IMG/VR virus record: IMGVR_UViG_3300043411_001777
Location: 62,001 to 126,000 of that record
Direction: 5' to 3' (one strand)
DNA length: 64,000 bases
The notes beneath the pieces were generated by a model. That model made no database searches. It saw only the letters and a program-made list of their open reading frames with translations, and was not told the DNA's origin. Made by a program: the position numbers and the translations under genes. Shown piece by piece: positions 36,694 through 49,505 of the stretch (within the stretch, counting starts at the first letter, position 1; each line of letters begins with the position of its first letter).

Positions 36694-37056
36694 TTATTCC
36701 AGGACTTGGTCCAAGTCCACCTTATTCGCCATAGCTGCAAGCGCCGCCAGTTTGCCGGTCTTGAGAATCGGCTCCGGAGCCTTGAAAGGCACCGCCTCCG
36801 GATTGTCTTTCAAGGGCACAACGGCCGCATCGAAAAAGCAAACCTCTGAGGTTTGGACCGCCTCTGAGGTTTGGACCGCCTCTGAGGTTTGGACCGCCTC
36901 TGAGGTTTGGACCGCCTCTGAGGTAACCACTACAGGGTCGCACAAGTATTCCGTCGTCATTTTCGCAACCTGCTGATCGGAAATCTCCTCTCCGAAAAGG
37001 TCATCCAAAGGAATAACGGGGCCCACTGCTTCTGCATATCGTTTCATACTGCTCAC
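36694..37056 (-). CDS. hypothetical protein with (TSEAVQ)4 repeat
   Basis: GTGA overlap; in-frame 18-bp repeats. Confidence 0.7.
   Translation of the reverse strand: MSSMKRYAEAVGPVIPLDDLFGEEISDQQVAKMTTEYLCDPVVVTSEAVQTSEAVQTSEAVQTSEAVQTSEVCFFDAAVVPLKDNPEAVPFKAPEPILKTGKLAALAAMANKVDLDQVLE
36843..36924. repeat. coding tandem repeat CCTCTGAGGTTTGGACCG x4.5
   Basis: perfect 18-bp units, no spacers. Confidence 0.95.
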
Positions 37057-37250
37057 TTATCGTAACTGTCTTTGTACCAGCCACCACCCTTCAGTTGAAA
37101 GCTGTTCGTGCTGATAAGCCGTTCCAATTCCCCTCGGCACAACTCTTCCAAAAGTTGGGCGGGACACTCTGGCGCTGGTGTATCCCACCGAGCCATCCTA
37201 AACTCGTGAGCAGCACCACACTTCTTACACCGATATTCGTAAATTGGCAT
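37053..37250 (-). CDS. FmdB-family zinc-ribbon protein
   Basis: MPIYEYRCKKCG...CP...LIS..SFQLKGGGWY. Confidence 0.9.
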   Translation of the reverse strand: MPIYEYRCKKCGAAHEFRMARWDTPAPECPAQLLEELCRGELERLISTNSFQLKGGGWYKDSYDK

Positions 37251-38827: not shown

Positions 38828-41800
38828 TTAGGCCCCTTCTGCTTTAAGTGCTTGGAGAATCGAAGGGTGGAACTTCCAACCTGGGTTCCACCCTTCAAGG
38901 ACAGCACCCGTAGAGTCTAATAACCGTAGCTCGCACGTTCCCGCCACATTCTTATGCCACCGATGAAGAAGATCACTCAAATGCTGAGCATTGGAGGGAG
39001 ACAGACTAATACGCAGCTTATATTCCAGAATACTAGAATCGGCCTGGGGCGGACTGGACTGAGGCTGACTGGGCTGCGCAGTAGCTCCCTCTATCACAGG
39101 GGCCATTACGCCCAGAGGGGCCTTTAGCATTTCTTCTGTCCACTGGATATGCTCCCCATACGGAGACTGCGCAAAGGCCTCCAAAGTCTGGAGTTTGAAT
39201 AGTGGTGCCAATGCCTCCGGGAAACGGGGAAGCTGCTCCCAATTCAGGCCCGCTTTAGCAGCCGCGTCAGGGTTCTTGATCTTCTTGTTTCCGACGTAAC
39301 GAACCTCACCAGAACGCATGGAATCCAAATTCCAAGGAACCGACCAATCCTTACCGATTTCAACGTCCGAAGTGAGCGGGACGGGCCACTTCCGACCTTT
39401 AATGAAGTCGTTATTGATCATGATGAGACGGATGGTCTCAATCGCCTCTTCAAGGATTGAGCCGTGGATCCGGAAGACCAATTCGTCGTGCATGGTGATG
39501 AACATCTTGACCTTGTCCAACCACCCCTTCTTCTTCACCATTCGGTAAATAAGAGCCATTGCGATTTTGGTAATGTCCGCCGAAAGACCCTGCACGGGTC
39601 CGTTAATCGAGTTTCGTTCGGATTTGGAGCGAAAGAACCCGTCGGGGCTATTGATATCCGGAAGGCTCAGTTTCCGACCGAAAGCGGTAAACACAAAGCC
39701 ATTCTTGTGGGCGAAACTCTTCTGTGCCTCCCACCACCGAGCGAGGCCAGGATATTGCTTATCGAAGGTCGTCTTAATGCGATAGCCTTCGTTCTTATCG
39801 CCACCAACTGCACGCTGTGCAGCGCTCCCTCCGCCGCCATAAACCATAGCAAAATTAAGCTGTTTGGCCTTCTGACGCAGGAACTTCCAATCCGGCTTTT
39901 GCGCGGAGTTTTCGCCATACACCGACAATGCCGTCAGCGTGTGGAGGTCACCGATCTTATCGGAGCCGCACTTCGGACAACGAGGCGGAGGTGTCTTAGG
40001 CGTACCCTGGGTGAAATCACATTCGAATTTGAACTCGCAAGCACTGCAACGGAAATACTCAGCCAGCCATTTAGGCTCGCGGGACAGATTCGTGACAATG
40101 CGAAGCTCGACGCCCGAGTAATCGCAATTGAAGCTGAACAAATGTCCAGCTAGCGCGAAATTATGACTTCCATCGACGGTAGCGCAAAACACTTTTTCCA
40201 CACGATCAGTCGGCTCCACGGACTTAACAACCCAATAAGCCCTTTCTGAGCCCGTCCCGCCGCAATCTGGGCACTCGTCCTGCCAGACGTTGCCTTCCCC
40301 GTCGCACCGGTCTATTCCGACCCCGAGCCCGCCGCACCCGTGGCACTGGCCACCACCTTCCTCCGGGCCAACGTATATCGAGCGCATTCTAGCCCCCGGC
40401 CTTAACTCCCGGGTGGTAACTTCTACGTAGGTTTTACCTGAGTAATCCCAAACCGACCATCTATGCTCGGCAGTTGCCGATACAACTTTCTCGGACCCTC
40501 TTTGGGTAAAGATGATCTTTTGTAGGGGTTGCACCCCAAAACACCAAATTGGTGCGTCTACCCAAGTTCCGACCCCATTCTTATTTGTCAATAAACGTTG
40601 CGTGGTTCCAGCCAAACCCCCAATCTGTTTGATTCCATCTGCCGTAATAATCTCGGTCTCAGCCGCAAAGCAATTATGAACCACCAAACCGTTAGCTTGG
40701 AAGTTGTTCCCGTCAGGAACGGTCAGATCCCAAACCGCGGCCTCACCGTCGGAGCACACCGATTCCAACTCATCTGTAAACGTCCGACCCCACGACTTGT
40801 CCTTTGGAAGCCGGTTTCCAGTGAGCATCAGAAGCTTCTCTTGATTTCGGGCCTCCGAAAAACCAATCCGATCGGTGAACCGGATGATGTCTGCACTGTC
40901 CTCAATCCTCAGATGGTCATTCGAGCGGACAGAACGAACACCTTGCTTTAGAAGCAGAACCTGCAACTCCTGAGCAACAGGCCCACCTATCAGCAAGTCA
41001 ATGTGGTCAGTAACCTTGGCGTCCAACTCGAAAACACCGCGAAGGAATGAGGCTTGAACCCCAACCGAAGAAAGCCAAACTTCCTCGGGAATGGAATTCG
41101 GTACGTCCCCCCACTTTTTAGTGAAGTCCTGCACCCAACGAGCAAATTGATTCCCCCAGAATCGGAACTCACCGTCTCCTAGGTACTTCTCCTTGAAGCT
41201 CACCCCGAATAGAAACTGGGACCAATCATTGGTGGTCCTCATGTAATCAACACCGCCCAACGAACCGAACTTGAAGCCCACAGAAACAGGGAGCTTGCCC
41301 TTGGACTCCACAAAGCCGGACCCGAACACGCGCCCAAGAAACTCAGCAACCAACTCGTCAAAGTGAGCCGGCACCCTTGCGGCCGTACGGCTCTGTCCAA
41401 GCGATTCTGCGAGCGGAGGCAGGGCGACATAGGGCTGGGCCGTGTACGCGTCTACAGCCGCAAGAACACACCGATCTCCGGGCCGTAGCTTGCCAGCCTC
41501 AACCCACGTCCTCCCCGTGTCGCGCTCAACACGCATAAGATGGTCGGACGTGACCCGTAGTTCATAGCCAGAGCGGGTCCGGACCCGAACCACGGGCTTA
41601 GTGCCATTATAGGTGACCGCACTTACCGGCTTCCAGCCATTTTCGGTCAGAACCAAATCCCCAATGGCCACATCACGAATCCGAAGGTCCCCTCGGGACG
41701 TTGGGATTCGTGCATTTTCATCCACGCAAGCAACTACGAACTCATCCTCTTCCGCTACGATTGTCTCACGCAATCGTGTCATACATTCTGGCCGGGAGGT

Positions 41801-43243
41801 GTCATAGGATGCGGGAATGGCCTGGAGGTTAAGCGCGGGGATACCCTGTTTCCCGGAGCCCTCGCCTGCCGGGGTGGCAAACCGACCCGTGTCAACCTTA
41901 TGTCCGTTGAAGCTGATCTTCATGGATCCGTCGATCGGGTCCGCGTCCTCAGCCATAGGATACAAATAGGTTGACAGTGCCTTTTGCACTTCCCGGAATT
42001 TCTTCACCTTCCCCATGAAAGGGAATTGCTCACTGGCTTCCGTGACTACACGGTCCAATTCGTCTTTGGAGGTCTTAACCTGCTCAGACTTTTCTGTATA
42101 ACGTAGCCCGGGAACCTCTAGCTCCTCAAAAAGGTGCCCCAACTGTTGGGGGGAGGAGATATCGTAAACGTAGGGGTAAGTGACTTCCCCTTTCGGGGTG
42201 GCTTTTGTGATGAGAATGGACGGGTCAACATCCCGTACGGACTTAGCCTTAGCTAAGTCAATCCAACTCGATATCCGCTTCGTTGCATCTTGTGGGTCAA
42301 ACAGCTCAAACAGCTTGCGATAGAAACTAGGGGTACAGTCTCGCCCCAGAAGCTCTGTAGCTCCGGCATACACTTCTTGGATTGCAGCAAGCCATTCAAC
42401 ATGGCCGAGCCTGATTAGCTCCTGGGTCTTATTCAGATCACGAAGAATTCGGCACCGCTCCATCCACCGTGTGGAGGTAACACAGGACTTCTCAATGGCG
42501 TAGATAGCGGCTTGGTCAGCCTGCACTTTCGGCAGGAACTTCTCACATAGCAGGTAAGTGAAAATACCGTCACCGCCGCCATACCAAAGGACAGCCTCAT
42601 CCCTTGGGTCAAGCAAGGCAAAATTAAGGTCTTTCGTCCCTTCGGGGAACAGCTCGTCAAGTTCGATCTGATCGAACCCCAACTCCTTGAAAGTTAGCTT
42701 CTTGAGCTTCTTTTCCTTCTGGTGGGCGTCCGTTAGATACACCAGAATCAAGGAATCTTCCCACGACTTGTGGGAGTCGAAATTCCAATCCAGGCCCGGG
42801 ATGCCTGTAAACTCCAAGAACTCCTGGTCAAACTTGCCATAATGGAACAGGGCAACATGACTGCCTTCCATAAAAGCGGCCATTAGCCTGCCAAATTCCT
42901 TCGTCCAAAGGCTTTGGGGGATATTGGCAGAAGCAATCTCTTCGTCCACCTTCCCTAGCTTCTCGTCGATACCGTGAGAAATTGGAAGGTAGTAGCCATT
43001 GACCCCGTCGGGAGAGAGGCAGATACCTACAATTCGGTCGACGGTCTTCCCGTTGAAAACCCGGTTATCTAGGCCGGTGGTTTCAAGGTCAACGGCAATG
43101 CGTTTGGTAGGGGACGCAAGACACGTATCAATAGCCGCCGTAATGTTGTCTGGCGTAACAAGGTGGAATTTGAAGTTGCTTAACCAATCCCGCTTACGGA
43201 CTTGGATTTTGGAGTTTTCCTCAAGGAAGTCAAAAAAGCTCAT
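38828..43243 (-). CDS. polA: family A DNA polymerase with 3'-5' exonuclease, two inteins and a Zn-ribbon insertion
   Basis: VDLETTG (ExoI), KFD, VDTGRF, LQAIP, CDYSGVELR (motif A), KAKQLNFAMVYG (B), MHDEL (C); AGGAG SD before ATG 43243. Confidence 0.96.
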   Translation of the reverse strand: MSFFDFLEENSKIQVRKRDWLSNFKFHLVTPDNITAAIDTCLASPTKRIAVDLETTGLDNRVFNGKTVDRIVGICLSPDGVNGYYLPISHGIDEKLGKVDEEIASANIPQSLWTKEFGRLMAAFMEGSHVALFHYGKFDQEFLEFTGIPGLDWNFDSHKSWEDSLILVYLTDAHQKEKKLKKLTFKELGFDQIELDELFPEGTKDLNFALLDPRDEAVLWYGGGDGIFTYLLCEKFLPKVQADQAAIYAIEKSCVTSTRWMERCRILRDLNKTQELIRLGHVEWLAAIQEVYAGATELLGRDCTPSFYRKLFELFDPQDATKRISSWIDLAKAKSVRDVDPSILITKATPKGEVTYPYVYDISSPQQLGHLFEELEVPGLRYTEKSEQVKTSKDELDRVVTEASEQFPFMGKVKKFREVQKALSTYLYPMAEDADPIDGSMKISFNGHKVDTGRFATPAGEGSGKQGIPALNLQAIPASYDTSRPECMTRLRETIVAEEDEFVVACVDENARIPTSRGDLRIRDVAIGDLVLTENGWKPVSAVTYNGTKPVVRVRTRSGYELRVTSDHLMRVERDTGRTWVEAGKLRPGDRCVLAAVDAYTAQPYVALPPLAESLGQSRTAARVPAHFDELVAEFLGRVFGSGFVESKGKLPVSVGFKFGSLGGVDYMRTTNDWSQFLFGVSFKEKYLGDGEFRFWGNQFARWVQDFTKKWGDVPNSIPEEVWLSSVGVQASFLRGVFELDAKVTDHIDLLIGGPVAQELQVLLLKQGVRSVRSNDHLRIEDSADIIRFTDRIGFSEARNQEKLLMLTGNRLPKDKSWGRTFTDELESVCSDGEAAVWDLTVPDGNNFQANGLVVHNCFAAETEIITADGIKQIGGLAGTTQRLLTNKNGVGTWVDAPIWCFGVQPLQKIIFTQRGSEKVVSATAEHRWSVWDYSGKTYVEVTTRELRPGARMRSIYVGPEEGGGQCHGCGGLGVGIDRCDGEGNVWQDECPDCGGTGSERAYWVVKSVEPTDRVEKVFCATVDGSHNFALAGHLFSFNCDYSGVELRIVTNLSREPKWLAEYFRCSACEFKFECDFTQGTPKTPPPRCPKCGSDKIGDLHTLTALSVYGENSAQKPDWKFLRQKAKQLNFAMVYGGGGSAAQRAVGGDKNEGYRIKTTFDKQYPGLARWWEAQKSFAHKNGFVFTAFGRKLSLPDINSPDGFFRSKSERNSINGPVQGLSADITKIAMALIYRMVKKKGWLDKVKMFITMHDELVFRIHGSILEEAIETIRLIMINNDFIKGRKWPVPLTSDVEIGKDWSVPWNLDSMRSGEVRYVGNKKIKNPDAAAKAGLNWEQLPRFPEALAPLFKLQTLEAFAQSPYGEHIQWTEEMLKAPLGVMAPVIEGATAQPSQPQSSPPQADSSILEYKLRISLSPSNAQHLSDLLHRWHKNVAGTCELRLLDSTGAVLEGWNPGWKFHPSILQALKAEGA
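40127..40672 (-). mobile_element. intein 2 (182-aa mini-intein) containing a CxxCxGxG zinc finger
   Basis: CFAAETEIITADG...ATAEHRW...VFCATVDGSHNF...FSFN followed by CDYSG. Confidence 0.92.
40673..41728 (-). mobile_element. intein 1 (352 aa) with a LAGLIDADG-like endonuclease region
   Basis: CVDENARI...VTSDH (block B)...EFLGRVFGSG / FLRGVFELDA...VWDLTV...NGLVVHN followed by C. Confidence 0.95.
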
Positions 43244-43688
43244 CAGGTCTCCTAGACAGGGAAAATTCCCCCCCGTCCGCAACTAGAACATACCGATTCT
43301 CACGCCACGCGAGGATCACCTGATTGGCGGCCCACAGGAATTCCTCTTCTAGCGGTGCCTGGTAACAAAGAGGCACTTTCTTATGCGGATAGCAGCTATT
43401 GTCTGCCAACACACACCTTTTGATCAACCCACAATGCATCCCGGTGACTTTAGCCAAACGATATTTGGGCTCGGGACCTATTTCGCGAAATAAGGGCAAA
43501 GAATCCCCATGCAGCGCTTTCGACAGAGATTCTCCGCTCACAATAGGGATCAGAGGTCGGAGAATGGTGTCTCTAAGACAATCCAATTTTCCCCAAGCAT
43601 TCTCACCTATAGGAGTGGGCCGCAATATCAAAACGGGGGTGCACGTATGCGGGTGCAACACCTGAAAACGTCTAAGCCCGTCACTCAC
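43230..43688 (-). CDS. hypothetical protein
   Basis: overlaps both neighbours in the replication module. Confidence 0.7.
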   Translation of the reverse strand: MSDGLRRFQVLHPHTCTPVLILRPTPIGENAWGKLDCLRDTILRPLIPIVSGESLSKALHGDSLPLFREIGPEPKYRLAKVTGMHCGLIKRCVLADNSCYPHKKVPLCYQAPLEEEFLWAANQVILAWRENRYVLVADGGEFSLSRRPDELF

Positions 43689-44268
43689 TTGCTACCCACC
43701 CGACCTTGTTCATCACTTTCAGCCGCAATCCCGCCAAACGTTCAGCCGCCGCTTCCGGGGTAAATTCCTGCTCATGTAGTAGGAAATGAATTCGATCCAC
43801 TTCCTCCCACAGCAAAAACGAGGCCTCCATTTTCAGGATCCGGTCCTCGGTTATGCCTTTAAGGAGTGACATTAGACGCTGCCTCTCCTGCTCATAGGGA
43901 GAGACTTTTTTCTCTACGGGTGTAGTTGTGGGGTTCCAGTCTTCCTGGATTGGAACCTTGATATGGTACTTACGCTCAAGGAGCGTGAGCGCTTCGATGA
44001 AGGTCTTGCGCTCCTTTTCTTGGACAGTCTCGATTACATCGCGACCTTTCACACACGCGAAGCAATACCAAGTGTTACTCTCCGGATAGACACGCGCGGA
44101 GGGCTTTGTGTCTCGCCCGTCACCGTGCAAATCACACTGGAACTGCTGTTCACGATGCCCAGCGTCAGACCGAACCCGGTACCCGTAAGCCTCTAGGATC
44201 TCAAGTATAGATACGGCTTCTTTTACGGCCGCGATGCGGTGTTTTAGGTGGTCGGACATATGAGCCAA
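43681..44268 (-). CDS. CHC2 zinc-finger (primase Zn-binding domain) protein with no recognisable TOPRIM
   Basis: FQCDLHG...KPSARVY...WYCFAC...DVI. Confidence 0.85.
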   Translation of the reverse strand: MAHMSDHLKHRIAAVKEAVSILEILEAYGYRVRSDAGHREQQFQCDLHGDGRDTKPSARVYPESNTWYCFACVKGRDVIETVQEKERKTFIEALTLLERKYHIKVPIQEDWNPTTTPVEKKVSPYEQERQRLMSLLKGITEDRILKMEASFLLWEEVDRIHFLLHEQEFTPEAAAERLAGLRLKVMNKVGWVASE

Positions 44269-44367
44269 ATATGGAAATGACTACGGCTTGTGCAATCAGC
44301 AGCACGATGAAACCCACAATACCCGGAATTACCACACCCATGCCCTTTTACAAGGTGTCCACTATAG

Positions 44368-45882
44368 TCACTCCAGGGCCATCAACTCTCCGTCAATAAC
44401 GTCGCCAACAGAGCGCTTCCCTTCTCCCGTCAAGATAAGGTCATAGCACGTAAGGAAACGGCGCCAAGGCATTTCAGTCCGGATAAGGAAAGTCTCGAAA
44501 GGCTCACTATCACGGGTTTTCAAGCACTGCATTTGCAGCCGATTTCGGGCTCTCAAATCGTCATCGATCCAACCCGCGGTCACCACGTCAGACGACTTTT
44601 CACACTCGTTGGCATAAGCGAGGTCCGTTAGCTGATAACTAGCTTGCCCGCCCTTCTCCAACCGCTTCATTGCGGTCTTGAACCCCTCGCGGTTGATCTG
44701 GAACAGAGCCACTAGAGCCATACCAGCACCACGGTTGAAGCCCAGCGCGATCTTCTTGAGGTCACGCATAACCTCATTGGTGGATTCCGTCGTGGAATTG
44801 TACTTGGTACGGCTCGCCATAAGACCCGCGTGATCAATGAAGATCGTTCGGAACGGGTCCTGCGAGTAAAGCAGCTCTGCCTGAGCCTTCAAGTCCGTGG
44901 ACGTGAAATCCATCTTATCCGGGTCAGCCACCCGAATATGGATTTTGCCATATCCATTTGCCGGATCGTCGAAGTCCGGCACCACGTACTTTAGGAGGAA
45001 CTCCTTCTCAGCCTCCGAAAGAAGAGCATCGCGGATGAGCTTGTATTCCAACCCCCCATTGGGGTTGTCTAGCCCCAATGCCTGCCGGATCTCCTTAAAC
45101 TTCTCGTGGGAAGAGTGGATGGCAAAGAGGATGCGCCTAATCTGATTGTAGGGCATCTCCAAAGAGAAAATGAGCGATGAGTATTTGTACCAGACTGCTT
45201 GGTTATACGCCCAGTTAACCATCAGGGTACTCTTAAAATGTCCTGTAAAGGCGGCATGAGTCCACAGCTCATATTTCTTCGCCCCACCTAGAACACTATC
45301 CATCTGCTCAATACCCGTGTGCTGCCCAACACCTGCTAACGGGTCTGCCTCAATCCTCAGATACTCCTCTGTAAAGTCAACGCCGTCACCCGTTATCTCA
45401 CCGCTTAACTTGCTACTAAGCGTTGGGGTGATTACGTCATGACTAGACTCAGCTACAAATTTGGCAGAGGCTACAGGTCCTTGCAAAAACTGCTCGACAC
45501 CCCGTTTCTTAACCGTTATGCCCGTATTGGCAATTTGCTGGGCCGTTGATAGGATCTCTGCCCATTTGCGCTTACGGGCTTGTTCCGCCAACGTCTCAAT
45601 ACGAGCAACGAAATCCCCATGATACTTAGGGGTTAAAGCCGCTAAAGTAGCAAGGTGGTCCTTGACATCGGTCTTGTTGTTTGAGTCAAAGTAGTTGACA
45701 ATAGTGGAGTATTCGGGCACATGGTTGTGTGCCCCAACGAACTTCTCCACGTAGCTGAAAATCTCTTGGTTGTGTGAGTCGAACTGCAACCCGCTCTGTG
45801 AGAGCATGAGGAAGTTCCTCAACATCAACTCTTGAGAGTCCGTCGGGCCAACCTGAAAGACACTCCGCAGCAACATTCTCAT
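44368..45882 (-). CDS. dnaB: DnaB-like replicative helicase
   Basis: AAFTGHFKST, IFSLEM, IFIDH, LFQINR, ECEKSSDVV, KTRD. Confidence 0.88.
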   Translation of the reverse strand: MRMLLRSVFQVGPTDSQELMLRNFLMLSQSGLQFDSHNQEIFSYVEKFVGAHNHVPEYSTIVNYFDSNNKTDVKDHLATLAALTPKYHGDFVARIETLAEQARKRKWAEILSTAQQIANTGITVKKRGVEQFLQGPVASAKFVAESSHDVITPTLSSKLSGEITGDGVDFTEEYLRIEADPLAGVGQHTGIEQMDSVLGGAKKYELWTHAAFTGHFKSTLMVNWAYNQAVWYKYSSLIFSLEMPYNQIRRILFAIHSSHEKFKEIRQALGLDNPNGGLEYKLIRDALLSEAEKEFLLKYVVPDFDDPANGYGKIHIRVADPDKMDFTSTDLKAQAELLYSQDPFRTIFIDHAGLMASRTKYNSTTESTNEVMRDLKKIALGFNRGAGMALVALFQINREGFKTAMKRLEKGGQASYQLTDLAYANECEKSSDVVTAGWIDDDLRARNRLQMQCLKTRDSEPFETFLIRTEMPWRRFLTCYDLILTGEGKRSVGDVIDGELMALE

Positions 45883-46700
45883 TTGAAGCCCTTCTTCTTG
45901 AACTTAGACTTCTTATCCCCGAAAAGCTCAGAATCGGAGAAAAGCGAAACCGCGGGCTTCGGTGTGGCAGTGGGCCTGTATTCCGGAGTAGGAGGTCTGA
46001 ACTCTACTGGTGCACGGCCATCTTCAGGAAAAGACAATTCAACGGGTCCGGACTGGGCCGCCTTACTCCCAATCTTAACGTGCTCCATTTCCCCTAAGAT
46101 GTCTCCCACACGGTAGTCCCAAAAGAGGTGGCCCTCATTAAGGGGGTTCTGAGGTGAGTCTACAATCCAAGTAGGCTTGTCCATTTGCTCCCGAAGGTGT
46201 AGCGCCTCTATAAGGCAATCCGCAGAACATCGGTTGGGGGCAGCTTTAACCCCTGTCAGTATCACCAGCAAGTCGCTGAACGCGACCAGATCGGATAGGC
46301 TATTGGCCACAGGCATACCCCCTTCTTGACGCTGGGAGGACACATCGGGGTCCAAGGGGGTGGCCTTGCCTAGCCACGCATCCAAGAGGTCTACGTCGGT
46401 AATCCGCTGGAAATAGAACATCGGACCTGAGCGGATCGCTACATGCCTCATATGGCGCTTGAAATCCGAATAGGCTCCAGTCACCCACAGGTTCTCGGTC
46501 TCCTTCCCTAAGAGGGGAGAGCTTTTGATCGGGCTAGACTTTACGAGTCCTTTCCAACGGCGCTCGACGTTAGCCAGAACGTCTTTAGCCAAGCGGCATT
46601 TACATACCTGTACTGCGACTTCGATTCCGGTCTTAATCACCGGAACAACACCCCGACCCTTACATTGGGGGCAGTTTACGTCCCCATCAAAATGCGTCAT
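45879..46700 (-). CDS. DnaC/IstB-like helicase-loader-like protein, degenerate AAA+
   Basis: N-terminal CPQCKGRG...CKC; DLLVI; REQMDKPTWI; no GKT; adjacent to dnaB. Confidence 0.6.
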   Translation of the reverse strand: MTHFDGDVNCPQCKGRGVVPVIKTGIEVAVQVCKCRLAKDVLANVERRWKGLVKSSPIKSSPLLGKETENLWVTGAYSDFKRHMRHVAIRSGPMFYFQRITDVDLLDAWLGKATPLDPDVSSQRQEGGMPVANSLSDLVAFSDLLVILTGVKAAPNRCSADCLIEALHLREQMDKPTWIVDSPQNPLNEGHLFWDYRVGDILGEMEHVKIGSKAAQSGPVELSFPEDGRAPVEFRPPTPEYRPTATPKPAVSLFSDSELFGDKKSKFKKKGFK

Positions 46701-48283
46701 TTAAGCGCGTCCTCCCGCAAGGATGAAAACAGATCGTCTAGAACAGAGGACTCTTGCATAAGCGCCGGATCGGCAAGGTCCGTATCGCCCTTGATCCGTT
46801 TCCCCAGCACCTCTTCTACCAGCTTCATCTTCTTGGACAGAATCTCCATTACCCGATGGTCAATAGTTTTGGCGCGACCGGACCGAGAAAGGATATGGAT
46901 CGCATACACCCGATCGTGCTCTGACCCAATTCGGATCATCCGACCAAGGATTTGCAAGTAATCTCCCGCCGAGAACGGGGCATCATAGAAAACAAGAGCT
47001 TTGGCGGCTTGCAGGTTGATCGCATCGGAAGCCGCCATCGTAATGAGAATTACGTTGACCCCCGAATTCGGGTTCTGGAAGGTCTCCATCGCCTTTAGAC
47101 GATCTTCGGTCTTTGTCTCAGCCCCGGTAATACGGACGCATTTGATCTTCTTAGACGCAAGCACCTTTTCAAGGTGGTCGACGTATTTACGGAAGCGCGT
47201 AAATACAATCACCTTCTCCCCCGCCAGCTCGCCCGGCTCCTCCCCCTCACTCAGCAAATCAAGGAGGGCTTCTTCTTTTCCGGAATCGCCCTCGGCCTCC
47301 ACCAGACACGGGTGGTTCACTACCTGTTGGCAGTAGGTCACAGCGGTTAGCTTCGTAACCTCTTTGTCAACACCACCCACCTCTAGAAGGCCGTTTAGAG
47401 CATCGGCATAGAGCTTTTCTTGCTCATCGGTCAACTGGACTTCAATGGTTTTCTGCTCTAGAACTGGGAGATCCGCGGCTACTTCAAACTTGGCCCGCCC
47501 TAAGAAATAGGGTTCGATGATCTCTCGGAATTGCTTAATGCAACCTGGAGGATACCCAACCACAACCGGAATCTTGCGACCCCCACCGATGGGCTGCATC
47601 TTCGTGATGCAGAAGTTCTGGAGGAACTTCGTCTTAGCGGGCAAAAGTCCGGGGACTATGATCTTGTAGATCGCCCAACCTTCCATCAGAGCGTTCTTTA
47701 TGATAGTGGCAGATAGCCCCCAAACATGACTAGCTTTTTGGGCGAGAAAATGGACAACCTGATGAACTCTGGATTTGTCATTCTTAAAGGCACTACATTC
47801 ATCGGCAACCAACACCCCATTTTCCCAATCTTGCATGGGGGTGAAATCCTGAACAGCGGCGCGATACCCCATAATCAAGACCGCTGGGCCTTCATGCGCC
47901 CGAAAAGCATCCCGAGTCTTTGTTCGCTGCGCAGGGGTTCCCTTACAGAAGAAGGGCGTTATCCCCTCAGTGAACTTGTGGAATTCGCTGACCCACTGCC
48001 CGGTAGCGGATTTTGTTGTCAGGAGCACCACCTTTTTGGTGGGGTCCTTTTCCCAAATCGAGCATAAAGCGGCGATAGTCATCAAGCTCTTGCCCGTGCC
48101 TGTATCGTCTCCAAGAACGAACCTAGGACACACTGCTAGATGCAGAATAGCCTGGACCTGATAGTAACGCAGCTTCAGTTCCCGACTTTGTCCAAAGTGG
48201 TCGAAGTGCGTTCTTAGGTATTTGATCGGCTTAAGGGCTAGGTCTTTAGACTCTCGGATTTGCTTCAAACGGGCGCTTAGCAT
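46697..48283 (-). CDS. SNF2-family SF2 helicase
   Basis: GDDTGTGKS, ADECS, LSAT, VIVFT, AINLQAA, QILGRMIRIG. Confidence 0.92.
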   Translation of the reverse strand: MLSARLKQIRESKDLALKPIKYLRTHFDHFGQSRELKLRYYQVQAILHLAVCPRFVLGDDTGTGKSLMTIAALCSIWEKDPTKKVVLLTTKSATGQWVSEFHKFTEGITPFFCKGTPAQRTKTRDAFRAHEGPAVLIMGYRAAVQDFTPMQDWENGVLVADECSAFKNDKSRVHQVVHFLAQKASHVWGLSATIIKNALMEGWAIYKIIVPGLLPAKTKFLQNFCITKMQPIGGGRKIPVVVGYPPGCIKQFREIIEPYFLGRAKFEVAADLPVLEQKTIEVQLTDEQEKLYADALNGLLEVGGVDKEVTKLTAVTYCQQVVNHPCLVEAEGDSGKEEALLDLLSEGEEPGELAGEKVIVFTRFRKYVDHLEKVLASKKIKCVRITGAETKTEDRLKAMETFQNPNSGVNVILITMAASDAINLQAAKALVFYDAPFSAGDYLQILGRMIRIGSEHDRVYAIHILSRSGRAKTIDHRVMEILSKKMKLVEEVLGKRIKGDTDLADPALMQESSVLDDLFSSLREDALK

Positions 48284-48301
48284 GCACCCTACTACCCGAA
48301 A

Positions 48302-48898
48302 TTACAGCCTCCACAACCCTAGGTAAACCAACAAATCTCCAAGGAAATGACCATTGGAGATATGCTCGGGCCGAAAGCGGAACCAATCCTGTACTTCCAG
48401 CTCGAAGTCGTCGCGATCCATTCCCAATTTGGTGGCGTGTGTGTTTAACGAATGGGCGTAACCTTTAACCGCCTCTACCGTAAAGGTTCTACCCACCCAC
48501 AGCGCCCCGATTTTAAGGGTTCGTGTTAACGCCTCCGTATCGGAAACCAAGCTGGCCGTATGGGTACGGGCAGGGAGCGTGCCCCACCCATTCATGAGAG
48601 ATACAAGGATCTGAAGGTTTTTCATCTCCCGAGGCGTGGCTGTAAAGGGCAACTTTCGAGGTTTAGTCACCAGAACTCGGAACACACCCCCCAATTCTTC
48701 TTTGGGGATACCCTGCTGTAGGGCGTGAAGGCGCAGCACTTGAGGCACGTCATAGGCAAGAGGCTGAATGGTGGAGGCTTCCCACTCTTTAGCAGCCTCT
48801 AAGGAGAGCTTGCGGATGGCGTTAAGTTGAAACGTATCCGCGTCTTTTCCGGTTTGACGTTCATATAACGCGTTAGCCAAGTCTGGTGGAAGTGCCAT
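48302..48898 (-). CDS. hypothetical protein
   Basis: GAGGGA SD before ATG 48898 (MALPPDL...). Confidence 0.7.
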   Translation of the reverse strand: MALPPDLANALYERQTGKDADTFQLNAIRKLSLEAAKEWEASTIQPLAYDVPQVLRLHALQQGIPKEELGGVFRVLVTKPRKLPFTATPREMKNLQILVSLMNGWGTLPARTHTASLVSDTEALTRTLKIGALWVGRTFTVEAVKGYAHSLNTHATKLGMDRDDFELEVQDWFRFRPEHISNGHFLGDLLVYLGLWRL

Positions 48899-48930
48899 TA
48901 AGTCCCTCTGCATACACTGGCTGATAACCA

Positions 48931-48964
48931 AAGAAAAAGGCCGGAGGATTCCCCCGGCCTTTTC
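48931..48964 (-). terminator. intrinsic terminator
   Basis: minus strand GGCCGG-GGGAATCCT-CCGGCC followed by TTTTTCTTT, just after the 48984 stop. Confidence 0.8.
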
Positions 48965-48983
48965 GACTACCCAAAGAAGGGTA

Positions 48984-49505
48984 TTAGACGACTTCTTCCT
49001 TTTTTGCAGGAAGAATGTGCTTGAACACCGCGGACCACAAGAGCGCAGCCGCAGCGCTCGCAATGAACCCAGTCCATAGCGCCGTGAGGATAGACACCCC
49101 AGCCGCCGCCGACAAGGAGAAGGCAAGAACACAACCCAGGGCCAGGTTCACCCATGGGAGAGCATTGGGGGGGACACGCTTATCGAGCCCAAAACGGCGA
49201 AAACCGTACATGAGGATAAGTAACGAGAACCCGATTACAGCTACCCACTTACCTCCCTTTGCGGCGGCTACGAGGTCCCCAATGAGACCGAGGGCCTCTG
49301 CATCCGTAGTGGGCTCCGTAACCACAGGAGCTGGGGCTGCTACGTCTGTAGCCTCCACAACGTCTGTAGCCTCAACCACATCAGTGGCCACTGCCTCAGT
49401 AGAGTCAACCGCCTCGACGGTATCCTCAACAACATCCTCAGCCATGGCAATGGCTGGGGTGAACAAGCAAAACGCAACAAGAACACCAACAAAAACCTTA
49501 GTCAT
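48984..49505 (-). CDS. signal-peptide and multi-TM membrane protein (holin-like candidate)
   Basis: hydrophobic N-terminus ending AIA-MA, ATDVVE repeats, three TM segments, basic/acidic tail. Confidence 0.7.
   Translation of the reverse strand: MTKVFVGVLVAFCLFTPAIAMAEDVVEDTVEAVDSTEAVATDVVEATDVVEATDVAAPAPVVTEPTTDAEALGLIGDLVAAAKGGKWVAVIGFSLLILMYGFRRFGLDKRVPPNALPWVNLALGCVLAFSLSAAAGVSILTALWTGFIASAAAALLWSAVFKHILPAKKEEVV

What the first reader, a model, noticed from the sequence alone, without database searches (positions are those of the whole stretch)
40127..40672. Mini-intein carrying a DnaJ-type zinc finger and class-3-like residues
Seen: between blocks B and F, where endonucleases normally sit, lies QCHGCGGLG-VGIDRCDGEG-NVWQDE-CPDCGGTG (~40247-40345), i.e. 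two full CxxCxGxG repeats. Block B ends HRW, block F is VFCATV and block G is FSFN, with Phe instead of the usual penultimate His. Established: CxxCxGxG is the DnaJ Zn-finger repeat; Trp-B12/Cys-F4/Thr-G5 is the WCT signature of class 3 and related inteins (W-C-S here); Zn and redox state can inhibit splicing. Inference: the cargo may make polymerase maturation conditional on Zn or redox state, or may be a passenger domain spread by the intein.
Basis: partly seen in the sequence, partly recalled or inferred. Interest (0 to 1): 0.85.

Follow-up and report, generated by a model that had tools for sequence, protein, structure and literature searches.

The report
Zinc-knuckle mini-intein in tandem intein pair
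A giant-phage DNA polymerase gene is interrupted at one spot by two self-splicing inteins placed back to back, and the second, small one carries a so far unique cysteine-rich (probably zinc-binding) loop where inteins normally carry a homing nuclease; whether that loop does anything is unknown.

Summary
Window 40127-40672 (minus strand) encodes a 182-aa mini-intein, aa 871-1052 of a 1484-aa family A DNA polymerase. Blocks A, B, F and G are intact and the HINT fold is predicted with high confidence. A 38-aa insert holds two perfect CxxCxGxG motifs exactly at the canonical nuclease-insertion site. Two things change the picture.

1. The Trp-B12/Cys-F4/(Thr→Ser)-G5 pattern is not special to this copy. 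It is the signature of a large phage intein family that also keeps Cys1 (153/153 relatives) and Cys+1. By definition this is therefore not a class 3 intein.
2. The mini-intein is the second of two inteins fused back to back at one site in polymerase motif A (…VVA|intein 1…VVHN|intein 2…FSFN|CDYSGVELR).

The Cys-rich insert is a singleton. It is absent from about 230 family inteins and from two word-index searches of 5.8 billion protein clusters. It matches DnaJ, anti-TRAP and λ Q zinc fingers only at motif level, and it is not modelled confidently.

My best reading is a splicing-competent, nuclease-less intein that came from ribonucleotide-reductase-type relatives. Its lost nuclease was replaced by a single Zn(Cys)4 hairpin acting as a loop staple. 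A Zn/redox switch is possible but has no supporting evidence. I rate it a new variant of a known kind, of moderate interest.

The parts
38828..43282 (-). Family A DNA polymerase precursor ORF. It is 1484 aa from a TTG start; the database gene call starts at Met14 (43243) and gives 1471 aa. It holds two inteins. The spliced product would be about 937-950 aa, like its intein-free relatives.
   Evidence: One search lists the ORF. One search gives Pfam DNA_pol_A at 1.3e-57. One search shows 100% identity to P0001. Searches show relatives of 920-1010 aa.
41729..43243 (-). N-extein, holding the 3'-5' exonuclease-like part and the N-terminal polymerase part. It ends in …EDEFVVA.
   Evidence: Relatives carry Pfam PF01612 and PF00476.
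40673..41728 (-). Intein 1, 352 aa (aa 519-870), running from CVDEN… to …LVVHN. It is the resident site-a intein and its LAGLIDADG nuclease has decayed.
   Evidence: TIGR01445 and TIGR01443 pass their cut-offs. One search shows about 36% identity to the allelic inteins of P0157, P0225, P0270 and P0272. Its nuclease motifs read GSG and ELDAK where the relatives have GDG and DADG, and about 75 aa are deleted.
40127..40672 (-). Intein 2, the mini-intein of the finding: 182 aa (aa 871-1052), running from CFAAE… to …HLFSFN.
40643..40672 (-). Block A of the mini-intein (CFAAETEIIT). Its Cys1 codon (40670-40672) directly follows the Asn870 codon of intein 1 (40673-40675).
   Evidence: Cys1 is invariant in 153/153 relatives.
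40457..40480 (-). Block B (SATAEHRW), with Thr-B7, His-B10 and Trp-B12.
40250..40363 (-). The 38-aa Cys/Gly-rich insert at the canonical homing-endonuclease insertion site. It holds CHGCGGLG (40322-40345), a degenerate IDRCDGEG, and CPDCGGTG (40250-40273). I take it to be a putative single Zn(Cys)4 hairpin with C-x2-C-x20-C-x2-C spacing.
   Evidence: alignment with family mini-inteins; shuffles; not covered by the family HMM; pLDDT <50; sub-threshold DnaJ, anti-TRAP and λ Q matches.
40148..40195 (-). Block F (KVFCATVDGSHNFALA), with Cys at F4 (intein residue 163).
   Evidence: Cys-F4 is present in 153/153 relatives.
40124..40147 (-). Block G (GHLFSFN) plus the +1 Cys of the C-extein. Residues G4-G6, 'FSF', are unique within the family, whose consensus is L-T-G.
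38831..40126 (-). C-extein, starting CDYSGVELR (polymerase motif A).
39959..40054 (-). Zinc ribbon (CSAC-x21-CPKC) inserted in the polymerase itself just after motif A. It is conserved across this polymerase clade and is not part of either intein.
   Evidence: One search gives a weak Zn_ribbon_8 match. One search finds CxxC-x(about 21)-CxxC at the same place in almost all of 119 relatives.

Best explanation
Window 40127-40672 (minus strand) is a splicing-competent mini-intein without a nuclease. It belongs to a large, promiscuous family of phage LAGLIDADG inteins marked by Cys1, Trp-B12, Cys-F4, Thr-G5, Gly-G6, Asn-G7 and Cys+1. Its nearest relatives sit in ribonucleotide reductase genes.

Here it lies ectopically in motif A of a jumbo-phage family A DNA polymerase. 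It is fused directly to the C-terminal Asn of a second, unrelated intein that is native to that site and has itself lost nuclease function. Making an active polymerase therefore needs two splicing reactions. These share one peptide bond, Asn870-Cys871. Cys871 is both the +1 nucleophile of intein 1 and residue 1 of intein 2, and either order of splicing gives VVA-C-DYSGVELR.

The 38-aa Cys/Gly-rich piece replaced the lost homing endonuclease. It most likely folds as one Zn(Cys)4 knuckle hairpin using C110, C113, C134 and C137, like zinc centre II of DnaJ, the λ Q zinc finger or anti-TRAP. Such a hairpin would bring its two ends together and so close the loop between the two halves of the HINT fold: a structural staple or neutral filler, not a catalytic part.

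Shown here: the intein identity, family membership, position of the insert, tandem arrangement and singleton status. Inferred: that splicing is active, that zinc is bound, and the staple role.
For: - Intein identity. The blocks are intact. There are 503 relatives at E<=1e-10. The family HMM hits both halves. The AlphaFold2 HINT core has pLDDT >90, and Foldseek's top hits are all inteins.
- Family signature. C1, C-F4 and N-G7 are present in 100% of 153 relatives, W-B12 in 97% and +1 Cys in 98%.
- Nearest relatives. The intein falls in a 49-member clade dominated by ribonucleotide-reductase-site inteins, support 0.87 (loci L002 and L003).
- Tandem arrangement and resident intein 1. Allelic single inteins of about 425 aa occupy the same site in P0157, P0225, P0270 and P0272. 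Intein-free relatives read VVAI|DFSGVELR.
- Insert position. It sits exactly where family mini-inteins have a 5-25-aa linker and full-size members have the LAGLIDADG domain.
- The motif is not chance (2.5e-5). Its best, sub-threshold similarities are all single-zinc CxxCxGxG hairpins: λ Q, DnaJ and anti-TRAP.
- No nuclease is hidden in another frame or on the opposite strand.
- Activity is likely because the ORF is open for 1484 codons, every catalytic residue is kept, and the unspliced insert would split motif A of what is probably the replicative polymerase, which sits inside a replication module.
Against: - The insert is a singleton, so no conservation or covariation supports a fold or a function.
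- AlphaFold2 gives it pLDDT <50 both in context and alone. No model passes a curated threshold for any zinc-finger family.
- Zinc binding is untested.
- Family mini-inteins manage with short plain linkers, so a staple is not needed.
- Block G (F-S-F at G4-G6) is unlike all 153 relatives. That could mean impaired or altered C-terminal chemistry.
- Nothing shows that two HINT domains joined without a linker can both splice.
Confidence: 0.6

Rival explanations
1. Conditional splicing switch. The Zn(Cys)4 hairpin sits at the position equivalent to the natural split site and nuclease site. It gates folding of the HINT domain, so polymerase maturation depends on zinc availability or on the redox state of the infected cell.
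For: - Four well-spaced Cys ligands plus a fifth Cys lie in a loop that links the two halves of the fold.
- Metal and redox control of natural inteins is established (PMC10663303, PMC6195587).
- Engineered inteins become ligand-dependent when a domain is inserted at this same site. This rests on my own knowledge and was not checked here.
- The active site already holds three invariant cysteines: C1, C-F4 and C+1.
Against: - Known metal control works by metal binding to active-site residues, not through an added domain (PMC10663303).
- Family mini-inteins with floppy linkers of similar or shorter length are common, so an unfolded loop need not block splicing.
- The insert is a singleton with no sign of selection.
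- There is no confident structure.
Confidence: 0.15
2. Metal-free junk linker. The insert is a disordered, Gly-rich remnant or replication-slippage product left after the nuclease was lost, and the CxxCxGxG look is incidental.
For: - pLDDT is <50 in both predictions.
- There are no homologues.
- All zinc-finger family matches fall below threshold.
- Both inteins of the pair are in the decay phase.
Against: - Two exact 8-residue motifs with DnaJ-like and λ Q-like spacing occur in only 2.5e-5 of composition-preserving shuffles.
- The insert shows no residual similarity to the family's LAGLIDADG region: it scores -4.3 bits, and 29% of shuffles score as high. It is therefore not simply a decayed nuclease.
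Confidence: 0.2
3. Class-3-type chemistry that makes the tandem work. Cys-F4, not Cys1, attacks the Asn870-Cys871 bond. This leaves the Cys871 thiol free to act as intein 1's +1 nucleophile.
For: - W-B12 and C-F4 are present and are invariant in the family.
- Thr-G5 mutations have only mild effects in class 3 inteins, so Ser is plausible (PMC5222942, PMC7891396).
- Same-site tandem arrays recur in this family: P0044 with four inteins and L030 with two.
Against: - Cys1 is kept in 153/153 relatives, which argues that it is used.
- Grafting WCT onto a class 1 intein did not give a class 3 mechanism (PMC7664689).
- Nearly all family members are solitary, so the trait is not an adaptation to tandem life.
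Confidence: 0.15
4. Dead relic. Intein 2 no longer splices, and the polymerase is either non-functional or dispensable in this genome.
For: - Block G (F-S-F) is unique among 153 relatives.
- The intein sits on a long branch in the family tree.
- Only one contig is known.
- A decayed, non-splicing intein pseudogene has a precedent (PMC3196547).
Against: - C1, T-B7, H-B10, C-F4, N-G7 and C+1 are all intact.
- There is no frameshift or stop in 1484 codons.
- The HINT core is modelled with high confidence.
- Motif A would be split by 182-534 residues.
Confidence: 0.05

Closest known systems
[quoted passage not shown]
   Same: They combine Cys1 with Trp-B12 and Cys-F4 and are phage-associated. Tori et al. 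2010 counted 3 such inteins among 37 WCT inteins (PMC2807308). They were later grouped as class 1 inteins outside the class 3 clade (PMC3196547).
   Different: Here G5 is Ser and G6 is Phe. The family found here is far larger (963 hits at E<=1e-3) and spans more hosts than the three cases cited: ribonucleotide reductase, primase zinc finger, RecA, PD-(D/E)XK nuclease, RtcB and a CHAP lysin. I did not compare this family with those three named inteins, so identity with them is untested.
Class 3 inteins (mycobacteriophage Bethlehem DnaB, M. smegmatis DnaB-1, M. chimaera DnaB-1)
   Same: Trp-B12 and Cys-F4 are present. The origin is phage-linked. The solved class 3 structures are among the fold matches (6rix, 6bs8).
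   Different: Class 3 inteins lack an N-terminal nucleophile and nearly all have Ser or Thr at +1. This intein has Cys1 and Cys+1. No sequence-level match to any solved intein was found.
DnaJ cysteine-rich domain (Pfam PF00684), anti-TRAP (RtpA) and the λ Q antiterminator zinc finger
   Same: The CxxCxGxG motif occurs twice, about 20 residues apart, as in one DnaJ zinc centre, in anti-TRAP and in λ Q. These are the best hits of the insert.
   Different: DnaJ has four repeats and two zinc centres. All matches are below threshold: PF00684 scores 15.1 bits against a cut-off of 32.7, RtpA 15.1 against 65, and λ Q has E 0.35. None of these modules is known inside an intein.
Metal- or redox-responsive natural inteins (Ssp DnaE, Mtu RecA, M. 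smegmatis DnaB inteins, C. neoformans Prp8, P. abyssi MoaA)
   Same: Their catalytic centres are cysteine-rich, and splicing is inhibited by Zn2+, Cu2+ or oxidation (PMC10663303, PMC6195587).
   Different: In those inteins the metal or disulfide acts on active-site residues. Here a separate Cys4 module lies at the distal nuclease-insertion loop, and no responsiveness has been shown.
Multiple neighbouring inteins in one gene (for example four sites in haloarchaeal MCM)
   Same: More than one intein must splice to mature one replication protein, and the inteins can interfere with each other (PMC10643990).
   Different: Those inteins occupy separate sites with extein residues between them. Here two inteins share one site and one scissile bond, with no extein residue between them. 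I found no paper describing that arrangement.

Membership tests
Intein (HINT protein-splicing domain) | Block A nucleophile at residue 1 | tested here: met
   Cys1 is present (CFAAETEIIT).
Intein (HINT protein-splicing domain) | Block B TxxH | tested here: met
   The block reads T-A-E-H at residues 67-70. Both T and H are invariant in relatives.
Intein (HINT protein-splicing domain) | C-terminal Asn followed by a Cys/Ser/Thr at +1 | tested here: met
   The junction reads …FSFN|C.
Intein (HINT protein-splicing domain) | HINT fold | tested here: met
   The AlphaFold2 model has mean pLDDT 85.5, with the core above 90. Foldseek's top 50 PDB hits are inteins, BIL or Hedgehog domains, at probability 1.00.
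Intein (HINT protein-splicing domain) | In-frame insertion whose removal restores a conserved host motif | tested here: met
   Removing both inteins gives VVA-C-DYSGVELR, against VVAI-DFSGVELR in intein-free relatives.
Intein (HINT protein-splicing domain) | Curated profile thresholds (Pfam PF14890, TIGR01445) | tested here: not met
   PF14890 scores 25.0 bits against a cut-off of 35.8. TIGR01445 scores 15.8 against 24.5. The family is divergent from the curated seeds, and the other tests above outweigh this.
Intein (HINT protein-splicing domain) | Actual protein splicing | not testable with these tools
   This needs expression of the precursor.
Mini-intein (no homing endonuclease) | No nuclease domain between blocks B and F, in frame or in another frame | tested here: met
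   The insert is 38 aa. No LAGLIDADG or HNH domain is hit. The family's nuclease region is not matched. Overlapping ORFs in other frames have no Pfam hits.
Cys1/W-C-T LAGLIDADG phage intein family (unnamed; defined here by the phmmer hits) | Significant similarity of both splicing halves, plus the C1, W-B12, C-F4, N-G7 and C+1 signature | tested here: met
   G4-G6 deviate: F-S-F against the consensus L-T-G.
Class 3 inteins | No Cys/Ser/Thr at intein residue 1 | tested here: not met
   Residue 1 is Cys, here and in 153/153 relatives. The definition is from PMC2807308 and PMC7891396.
Class 3 inteins | Trp at B12 and Cys at F4 | tested here: met
   HRW and VFC are present.
Class 3 inteins | Thr at G5 | tested here: not met
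   G5 is Ser here. The change is conservative, and deviations occur in about 4.6% of class 3 inteins (PMC7891396).
Class 3 inteins | Cys-F4 is the obligate first nucleophile (block F branched intermediate) | not testable with these tools
   This needs C1A and C163A mutants and detection of the intermediate.
Class 3 inteins | Membership of the monophyletic class 3 clade | not tested
   No class 3 sequences were placed in the tree. phmmer found no solved class 3 intein at E<=1.
DnaJ cysteine-rich (CR) zinc-finger domain, PF00684 | Four CxxCxGxG repeats forming two zinc centres | tested here: not met
   There are two full repeats plus one degenerate half-repeat (IDRCDGEG), enough for one centre only.
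DnaJ cysteine-rich (CR) zinc-finger domain, PF00684 | Profile score above the gathering threshold | tested here: not met
   The score is 15.1 bits against 32.7, and only one repeat is aligned. The NCBIfam DnaJ and RtpA models are far below their cut-offs.
DnaJ cysteine-rich (CR) zinc-finger domain, PF00684 | Zinc binding by the four Cys | not testable with these tools
   AlphaFold2 models no metal, and the insert has pLDDT <50.

The most novel reading that the evidence does not exclude
Two natural inteins fused without any extein residue must process one shared peptide bond, Asn870-Cys871. The second intein, which carries three active-site cysteines (C1, C-F4, C+1) and a Zn(Cys)4 module at the split-site-equivalent loop, would impose an order or a condition on that double splicing. 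Zinc-dependent or redox-dependent folding of intein 2 would decide whether Cys871 serves intein 1 as its +1 nucleophile or serves intein 2 as residue 1, so that maturation of the phage replicative polymerase is gated. This would be a natural conditional intein that uses a dedicated metal-binding domain, and a natural test case for crosstalk between inteins.
Probability: 0.12. Interest if true: 0.8.

Novelty: new variant of a known kind. Interest (0 to 1): 0.55.

Why it matters
Mini-inteins and cysteine-rich inteins are well known, and so is inhibition of splicing by metal or oxidation at the active site. Two things appear to be undescribed in the literature I could search.

- A discrete zinc-knuckle-type module occupies the nuclease slot of a natural intein. 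If it binds zinc, this would be a natural counterpart of engineered domain-insertion conditional inteins, and a compact candidate for a metal- or redox-switchable splicing tool.
- Two inteins abut directly at one insertion site, so one cysteine is both the +1 residue of the first and residue 1 of the second. This raises a clean mechanistic question: in what order do they splice, and how are premature cleavage side reactions avoided? Two further arrays in the same family (four inteins in a CHAP lysin, two in a ribonucleotide reductase) suggest this is a repeatable outcome of intein invasion in phages.

If the insert is inert, the locus is still a clear example of the late, nuclease-less stage of the intein life cycle in a huge phage.

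Tried and rejected
1. The insert as a relic of the family's LAGLIDADG motif. A MAFFT alignment placed GVGIDRCDGEGNVWQ over a LAGLIDADG relic in P0073. Scoring the insert against an HMM of 116 full-length family inteins gave -4.3 bits, which 29% of 2000 shuffles reached. Rejected.
2. The insert copied from elsewhere in the window, including the polymerase's own zinc ribbon. BLASTP against all window ORFs found nothing credible.
3. A hidden nuclease in another frame or on the opposite strand, as reported for some phage and cyanobacterial inteins. The overlapping ORFs have no Pfam hits.
4. Looking for a second copy of the insert:
   - viral, metagenome and genome contig scans with peptide patterns;
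   - two region-restricted searches of the 5.8-billion-cluster protein set, covering proteins of 248-787 aa and 816-2597 aa;
   - the 150 best of 963 hits from the exhaustive representative search;
   - 77 further family inteins from IMG/VR.
   Only the window's own protein turned up. P0001 is identical to it.
5. Structure prediction of the insert, in context with a 24-sequence alignment and alone. Both gave pLDDT <50, so the fold is undecided.
6. Sequence search of the mini-intein against PDB chains gave no intein hit at E<=1. Only the fold comparison works.
7. Base composition as a sign of recent transfer. GC3 is 0.54 for intein 2 and about 0.60 for the exteins and intein 1, which is not decisive.
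8. Tori & Perler 2011 tested WCT inteins that have Ser1 or Cys1, but the paper is not held. I rely on how later papers cite it.
Full report
**1. What is at the coordinates**

The finding lies on the minus strand, inside one long ORF (38828-43282, 1484 codons). Pfam identifies the ORF as a family A DNA polymerase (DNA_pol_A, 1.3e-57) with intein-splicing matches.

Translation of 40127-40672 gives 182 residues, from CFAAETEIIT to GHLFSFN, followed by CDYSGVELR.
- block B, SATAEHRW;
- block F, KVFCATVDGSHNFALA, with Cys at F4;
- block G, ending FSFN;
- between blocks B and F, a 38-residue stretch (40250-40363) with CHGCGGLG, a degenerate IDRCDGEG, and CPDCGGTG.

In 200,000 shuffles that keep the composition (8 Cys, 26 Gly), two or more CxxCxGxG motifs appeared at a frequency of 2.5e-5.

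**2. It is a genuine intein of a large family**

An exhaustive phmmer search of 1.84 billion representative proteins gave 963 hits at E<=1e-3 and 503 at E<=1e-10. I delimited 153 related inteins from the best 150 proteins. They are mostly 308-345 aa with a LAGLIDADG domain; 25 are mini-inteins of 135-187 aa.

An HMM of 116 full-size members matches the window's intein in two pieces. Residues 1-103 score 1.1e-37 and residues 142-182 score 1.3e-17. The HMM skips residues 104-141, which are the insert. Alignment with family mini-inteins shows the insert lies exactly where they have a 5-25-residue linker and where full-size members carry the nuclease.

An AlphaFold2 model built with a 24-sequence alignment has pLDDT >=90 for 133 residues. 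Its best PDB matches are all intein or HINT structures, class 1 and class 3 alike, at probability 1.00. By sequence alone no solved intein is matched, and the curated Pfam and TIGR intein models fall below their cut-offs. The family is therefore divergent from the characterised inteins.

**3. The 'class-3-like' residues are a family trait, and Cys1 is kept**

Across the 153 relatives the frequencies are as follows.

| Position | Residue | Frequency |
|---|---|---|
| A1 | Cys | 100% |
| B7 / B10 | Thr / His | about 97% each |
| B12 | Trp | 97% |
| F4 | Cys | 100% |
| G5 | Thr | 88% |
| G6 | Gly | 80% |
| G7 | Asn | 100% |
| +1 | Cys | 98% |
| -1 | Asn | 30% |

Class 3 inteins are defined by the absence of an N-terminal nucleophile together with the WCT triplet (PMC2807308). 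The operational definition is 'no cysteine at the N-end and a cysteine at C2:4' (PMC7891396). That defining feature is not met here.

[quoted passage not shown] What is peculiar to this copy is block G. F-S-F at G4-G6 is found in none of the 153 relatives, whose consensus is L-T-G. The missing penultimate His is normal for the family.

**4.

Upstream of the mini-intein, with no residue between, lies a second complete intein. It is 352 aa (40673-41728), running from CVDEN… to …GLVVHN, and it passes the TIGR N- and C-terminal intein models. The precursor reads …EFVVA | intein 1 | intein 2 | CDYSGVELR….

Relatives of this polymerase are mostly 920-1010 aa and are encoded on contigs of up to 536 kb. 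The nearest GenBank phage is an uncultured 485-kb phage. Intein-free relatives read VVAI|DFSGVELR at this point.

Four relatives (P0157, P0225, P0270, P0272) carry a single intein of about 425 aa at the same site. It ends VHN|C and is about 36% identical to intein 1. Intein 1 is therefore the resident of this site and intein 2 is the newcomer.

Intein 1's nuclease has decayed. It reads GSG where the relatives have GDG, ELDAK where they have DADG, and it has lost about 75 residues.

In a tree of the splicing blocks, the mini-intein sits on a long branch. It falls within a 49-member clade (support 0.87) dominated by inteins of a ribonucleotide-reductase site, ALNN|…|CAFVST (loci L002 and L003). 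Both junctions of intein 2 read AAT|TGC, so the exact insertion point is ambiguous by one codon.

**5. The insert**

It is a singleton. None of the 153 inteins or of 77 further family inteins from IMG/VR has two CxxC motifs. Region-restricted searches of the 5.8-billion-cluster set, covering proteins of 248-787 aa and 816-2597 aa, returned only the window's own protein. Pattern scans of viral, metagenome and genome contigs found no second copy.

Its best similarities are all sub-threshold, and all are single-zinc CxxCxGxG hairpins:

| Model or structure | Result |
|---|---|
| Pfam DnaJ_CXXCXGXG | 15.1 bits against a cut-off of 32.7; one repeat aligned |
| NCBIfam DnaJ | E 0.013 |
| NCBIfam anti-TRAP (RtpA) | E 0.018 |
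| PDB λ Q antiterminator zinc finger | E 0.35 |
| PDB DnaJ | E 2.3-6 |

The spacing, C-x2-C-x20-C-x2-C, fits one Zn(Cys)4 centre, not the two centres of DnaJ.

The insert shows no residual similarity to the family's LAGLIDADG region. It matches nothing else in the window. No nuclease is hidden in another frame.

AlphaFold2 does not model it with confidence, either in context (residues 111-143, pLDDT <50) or alone (mean 45). That is expected for a metal site with no alignment depth, and it decides nothing.

**6. How it most likely works**

Shown:
- a complete HINT domain with all catalytic residues;
- its position in motif A of the polymerase, within a replication module of SNF2 helicase, DnaB-like helicase and a DnaG zinc-finger protein;
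- no nuclease;
- the tandem arrangement.

Inferred:
- Both inteins must splice to give an active polymerase.
- The Asn870-Cys871 bond is the C-terminal scissile bond of intein 1 and the N-terminal scissile bond of intein 2.
- Either order yields VVA-C-DYSGVELR.
- The Cys-rich insert folds as one zinc knuckle hairpin. Its ends meet, which closes the loop left by the lost nuclease.

This loop is the conserved nuclease-insertion site (PMC6801210). From general knowledge of intein structures, it lies away from the catalytic centre. I therefore favour a structural staple or filler role (0.6 for the whole reading).

However, known metal control acts on active-site residues (PMC10663303), and family members manage with floppy linkers. 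The other rivals are a metal-free junk linker (0.2), genuine Cys-F4-initiated chemistry (0.15, not exclusive of the main reading), and a dead intein (0.05).

**7. Comparison with what is known, and novelty**

The intein works like, and is best filed with, class 1-type inteins that carry Cys at F4. It is not a class 3 member, and its insert is not a DnaJ CR-domain member.

In the held literature I found no natural intein with a zinc-finger or zinc-ribbon insert. I also found no description of inteins abutting at one site. The nearest case is neighbouring but separate MCM sites (PMC10643990). The library lacks many subscription papers, so this absence is not proof.

Same-site arrays recur in this family. 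P0044, a CHAP/lysozyme tail protein, has four divergent inteins in a row just before its CHAP region. L030 is a ribonucleotide reductase with two in a row.

**8. Verdict**

The sequence observation is correct. The locus is a new variant of a known kind: a unique zinc-knuckle-bearing mini-intein, second in a same-site intein pair. Interest is moderate (0.55). It would rise sharply if zinc binding and conditional or ordered splicing were shown.

Noticed in passing
window 40673-41728 (-) with 40127-40672 (-): Two complete, unrelated inteins are fused back to back at one insertion site in polymerase motif A. Cys871 is both the +1 residue of the first intein and residue 1 of the second. Both junctions read AAT|TGC (GCAATT on the + strand at 40670-40675 and 40124-40129).
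   Followed up: yes
window 40673-41728 (-): Intein 1's LAGLIDADG nuclease looks inactive. Motif 1 reads GSG and motif 2 reads ELDAK, where the allelic inteins of related polymerases have GDG and DADG. About 75 residues of the nuclease's C-terminal part are missing.
   Followed up: partly
P0044 (metagenome protein, 1812 aa), residues 42-1225: Four divergent LAGLIDADG inteins of the same family lie directly one after another (…LVTGN|C…, …VLTHN|C…, …LVTGN|C…). The last ends in Gln (…ELTGQ|CVGYAWG), just before the region Pfam assigns to a CHAP domain in a phage tail lysin.
   Followed up: partly
L030 (IMGVR_UViG_3300045256_000188), ORF residues 200-892: A ribonucleotide reductase carries two full-length family inteins (343 and 350 aa, both with intact-looking LAGLIDADG motifs) in direct tandem at the ALNN|…|CGFVST site.
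   Followed up: partly
window 39959-40054 (-): The polymerase itself carries a zinc ribbon (CSAC-x21-CPKC) about 24 residues after motif A. A CxxC-x(about 21)-CxxC element at this place is present in almost all of 119 relatives, so it is a hallmark of this huge-phage polymerase clade.
   Followed up: partly
relatives P0154-P0272 of the window polymerase: This polymerase clade has three intein insertion sites: motif A (VVA|C…HN|C-DYSG), LRGxxK|C…HN|S-xNFA, and NGPIQG|C…VHN|S/T-xADI. The residue before D[YF]SG is Ile in most intein-free genes and Cys in intein-bearing ones. It is also Cys in five genes with no intein at that site (P0191, P0208, P0232, P0249, P0265), which may be footprints of intein loss.
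   Followed up: partly
window 36694-37056 (-): This ORF contains a perfect tandem peptide repeat, SEAVQT, in about four to five copies.
   Followed up: no
window 37053-37250 (-) and 45879-46700 (-): There are further small cysteine motifs near the polymerase. One is a 65-aa ORF starting MPIYEYRCKKCG, a zinc-ribbon-like start. The other is a 273-aa ORF with no Pfam match that begins with a single CPQCKGRG knuckle. This replication region seems rich in zinc-knuckle elements.
   Followed up: no
window 43681-49132 (-): The genes upstream of the polymerase form a replication module: a DnaG-type CHC2 zinc-finger protein, a DnaB-like helicase and an SNF2-family helicase. None contains an intein of this family.
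   Followed up: partly
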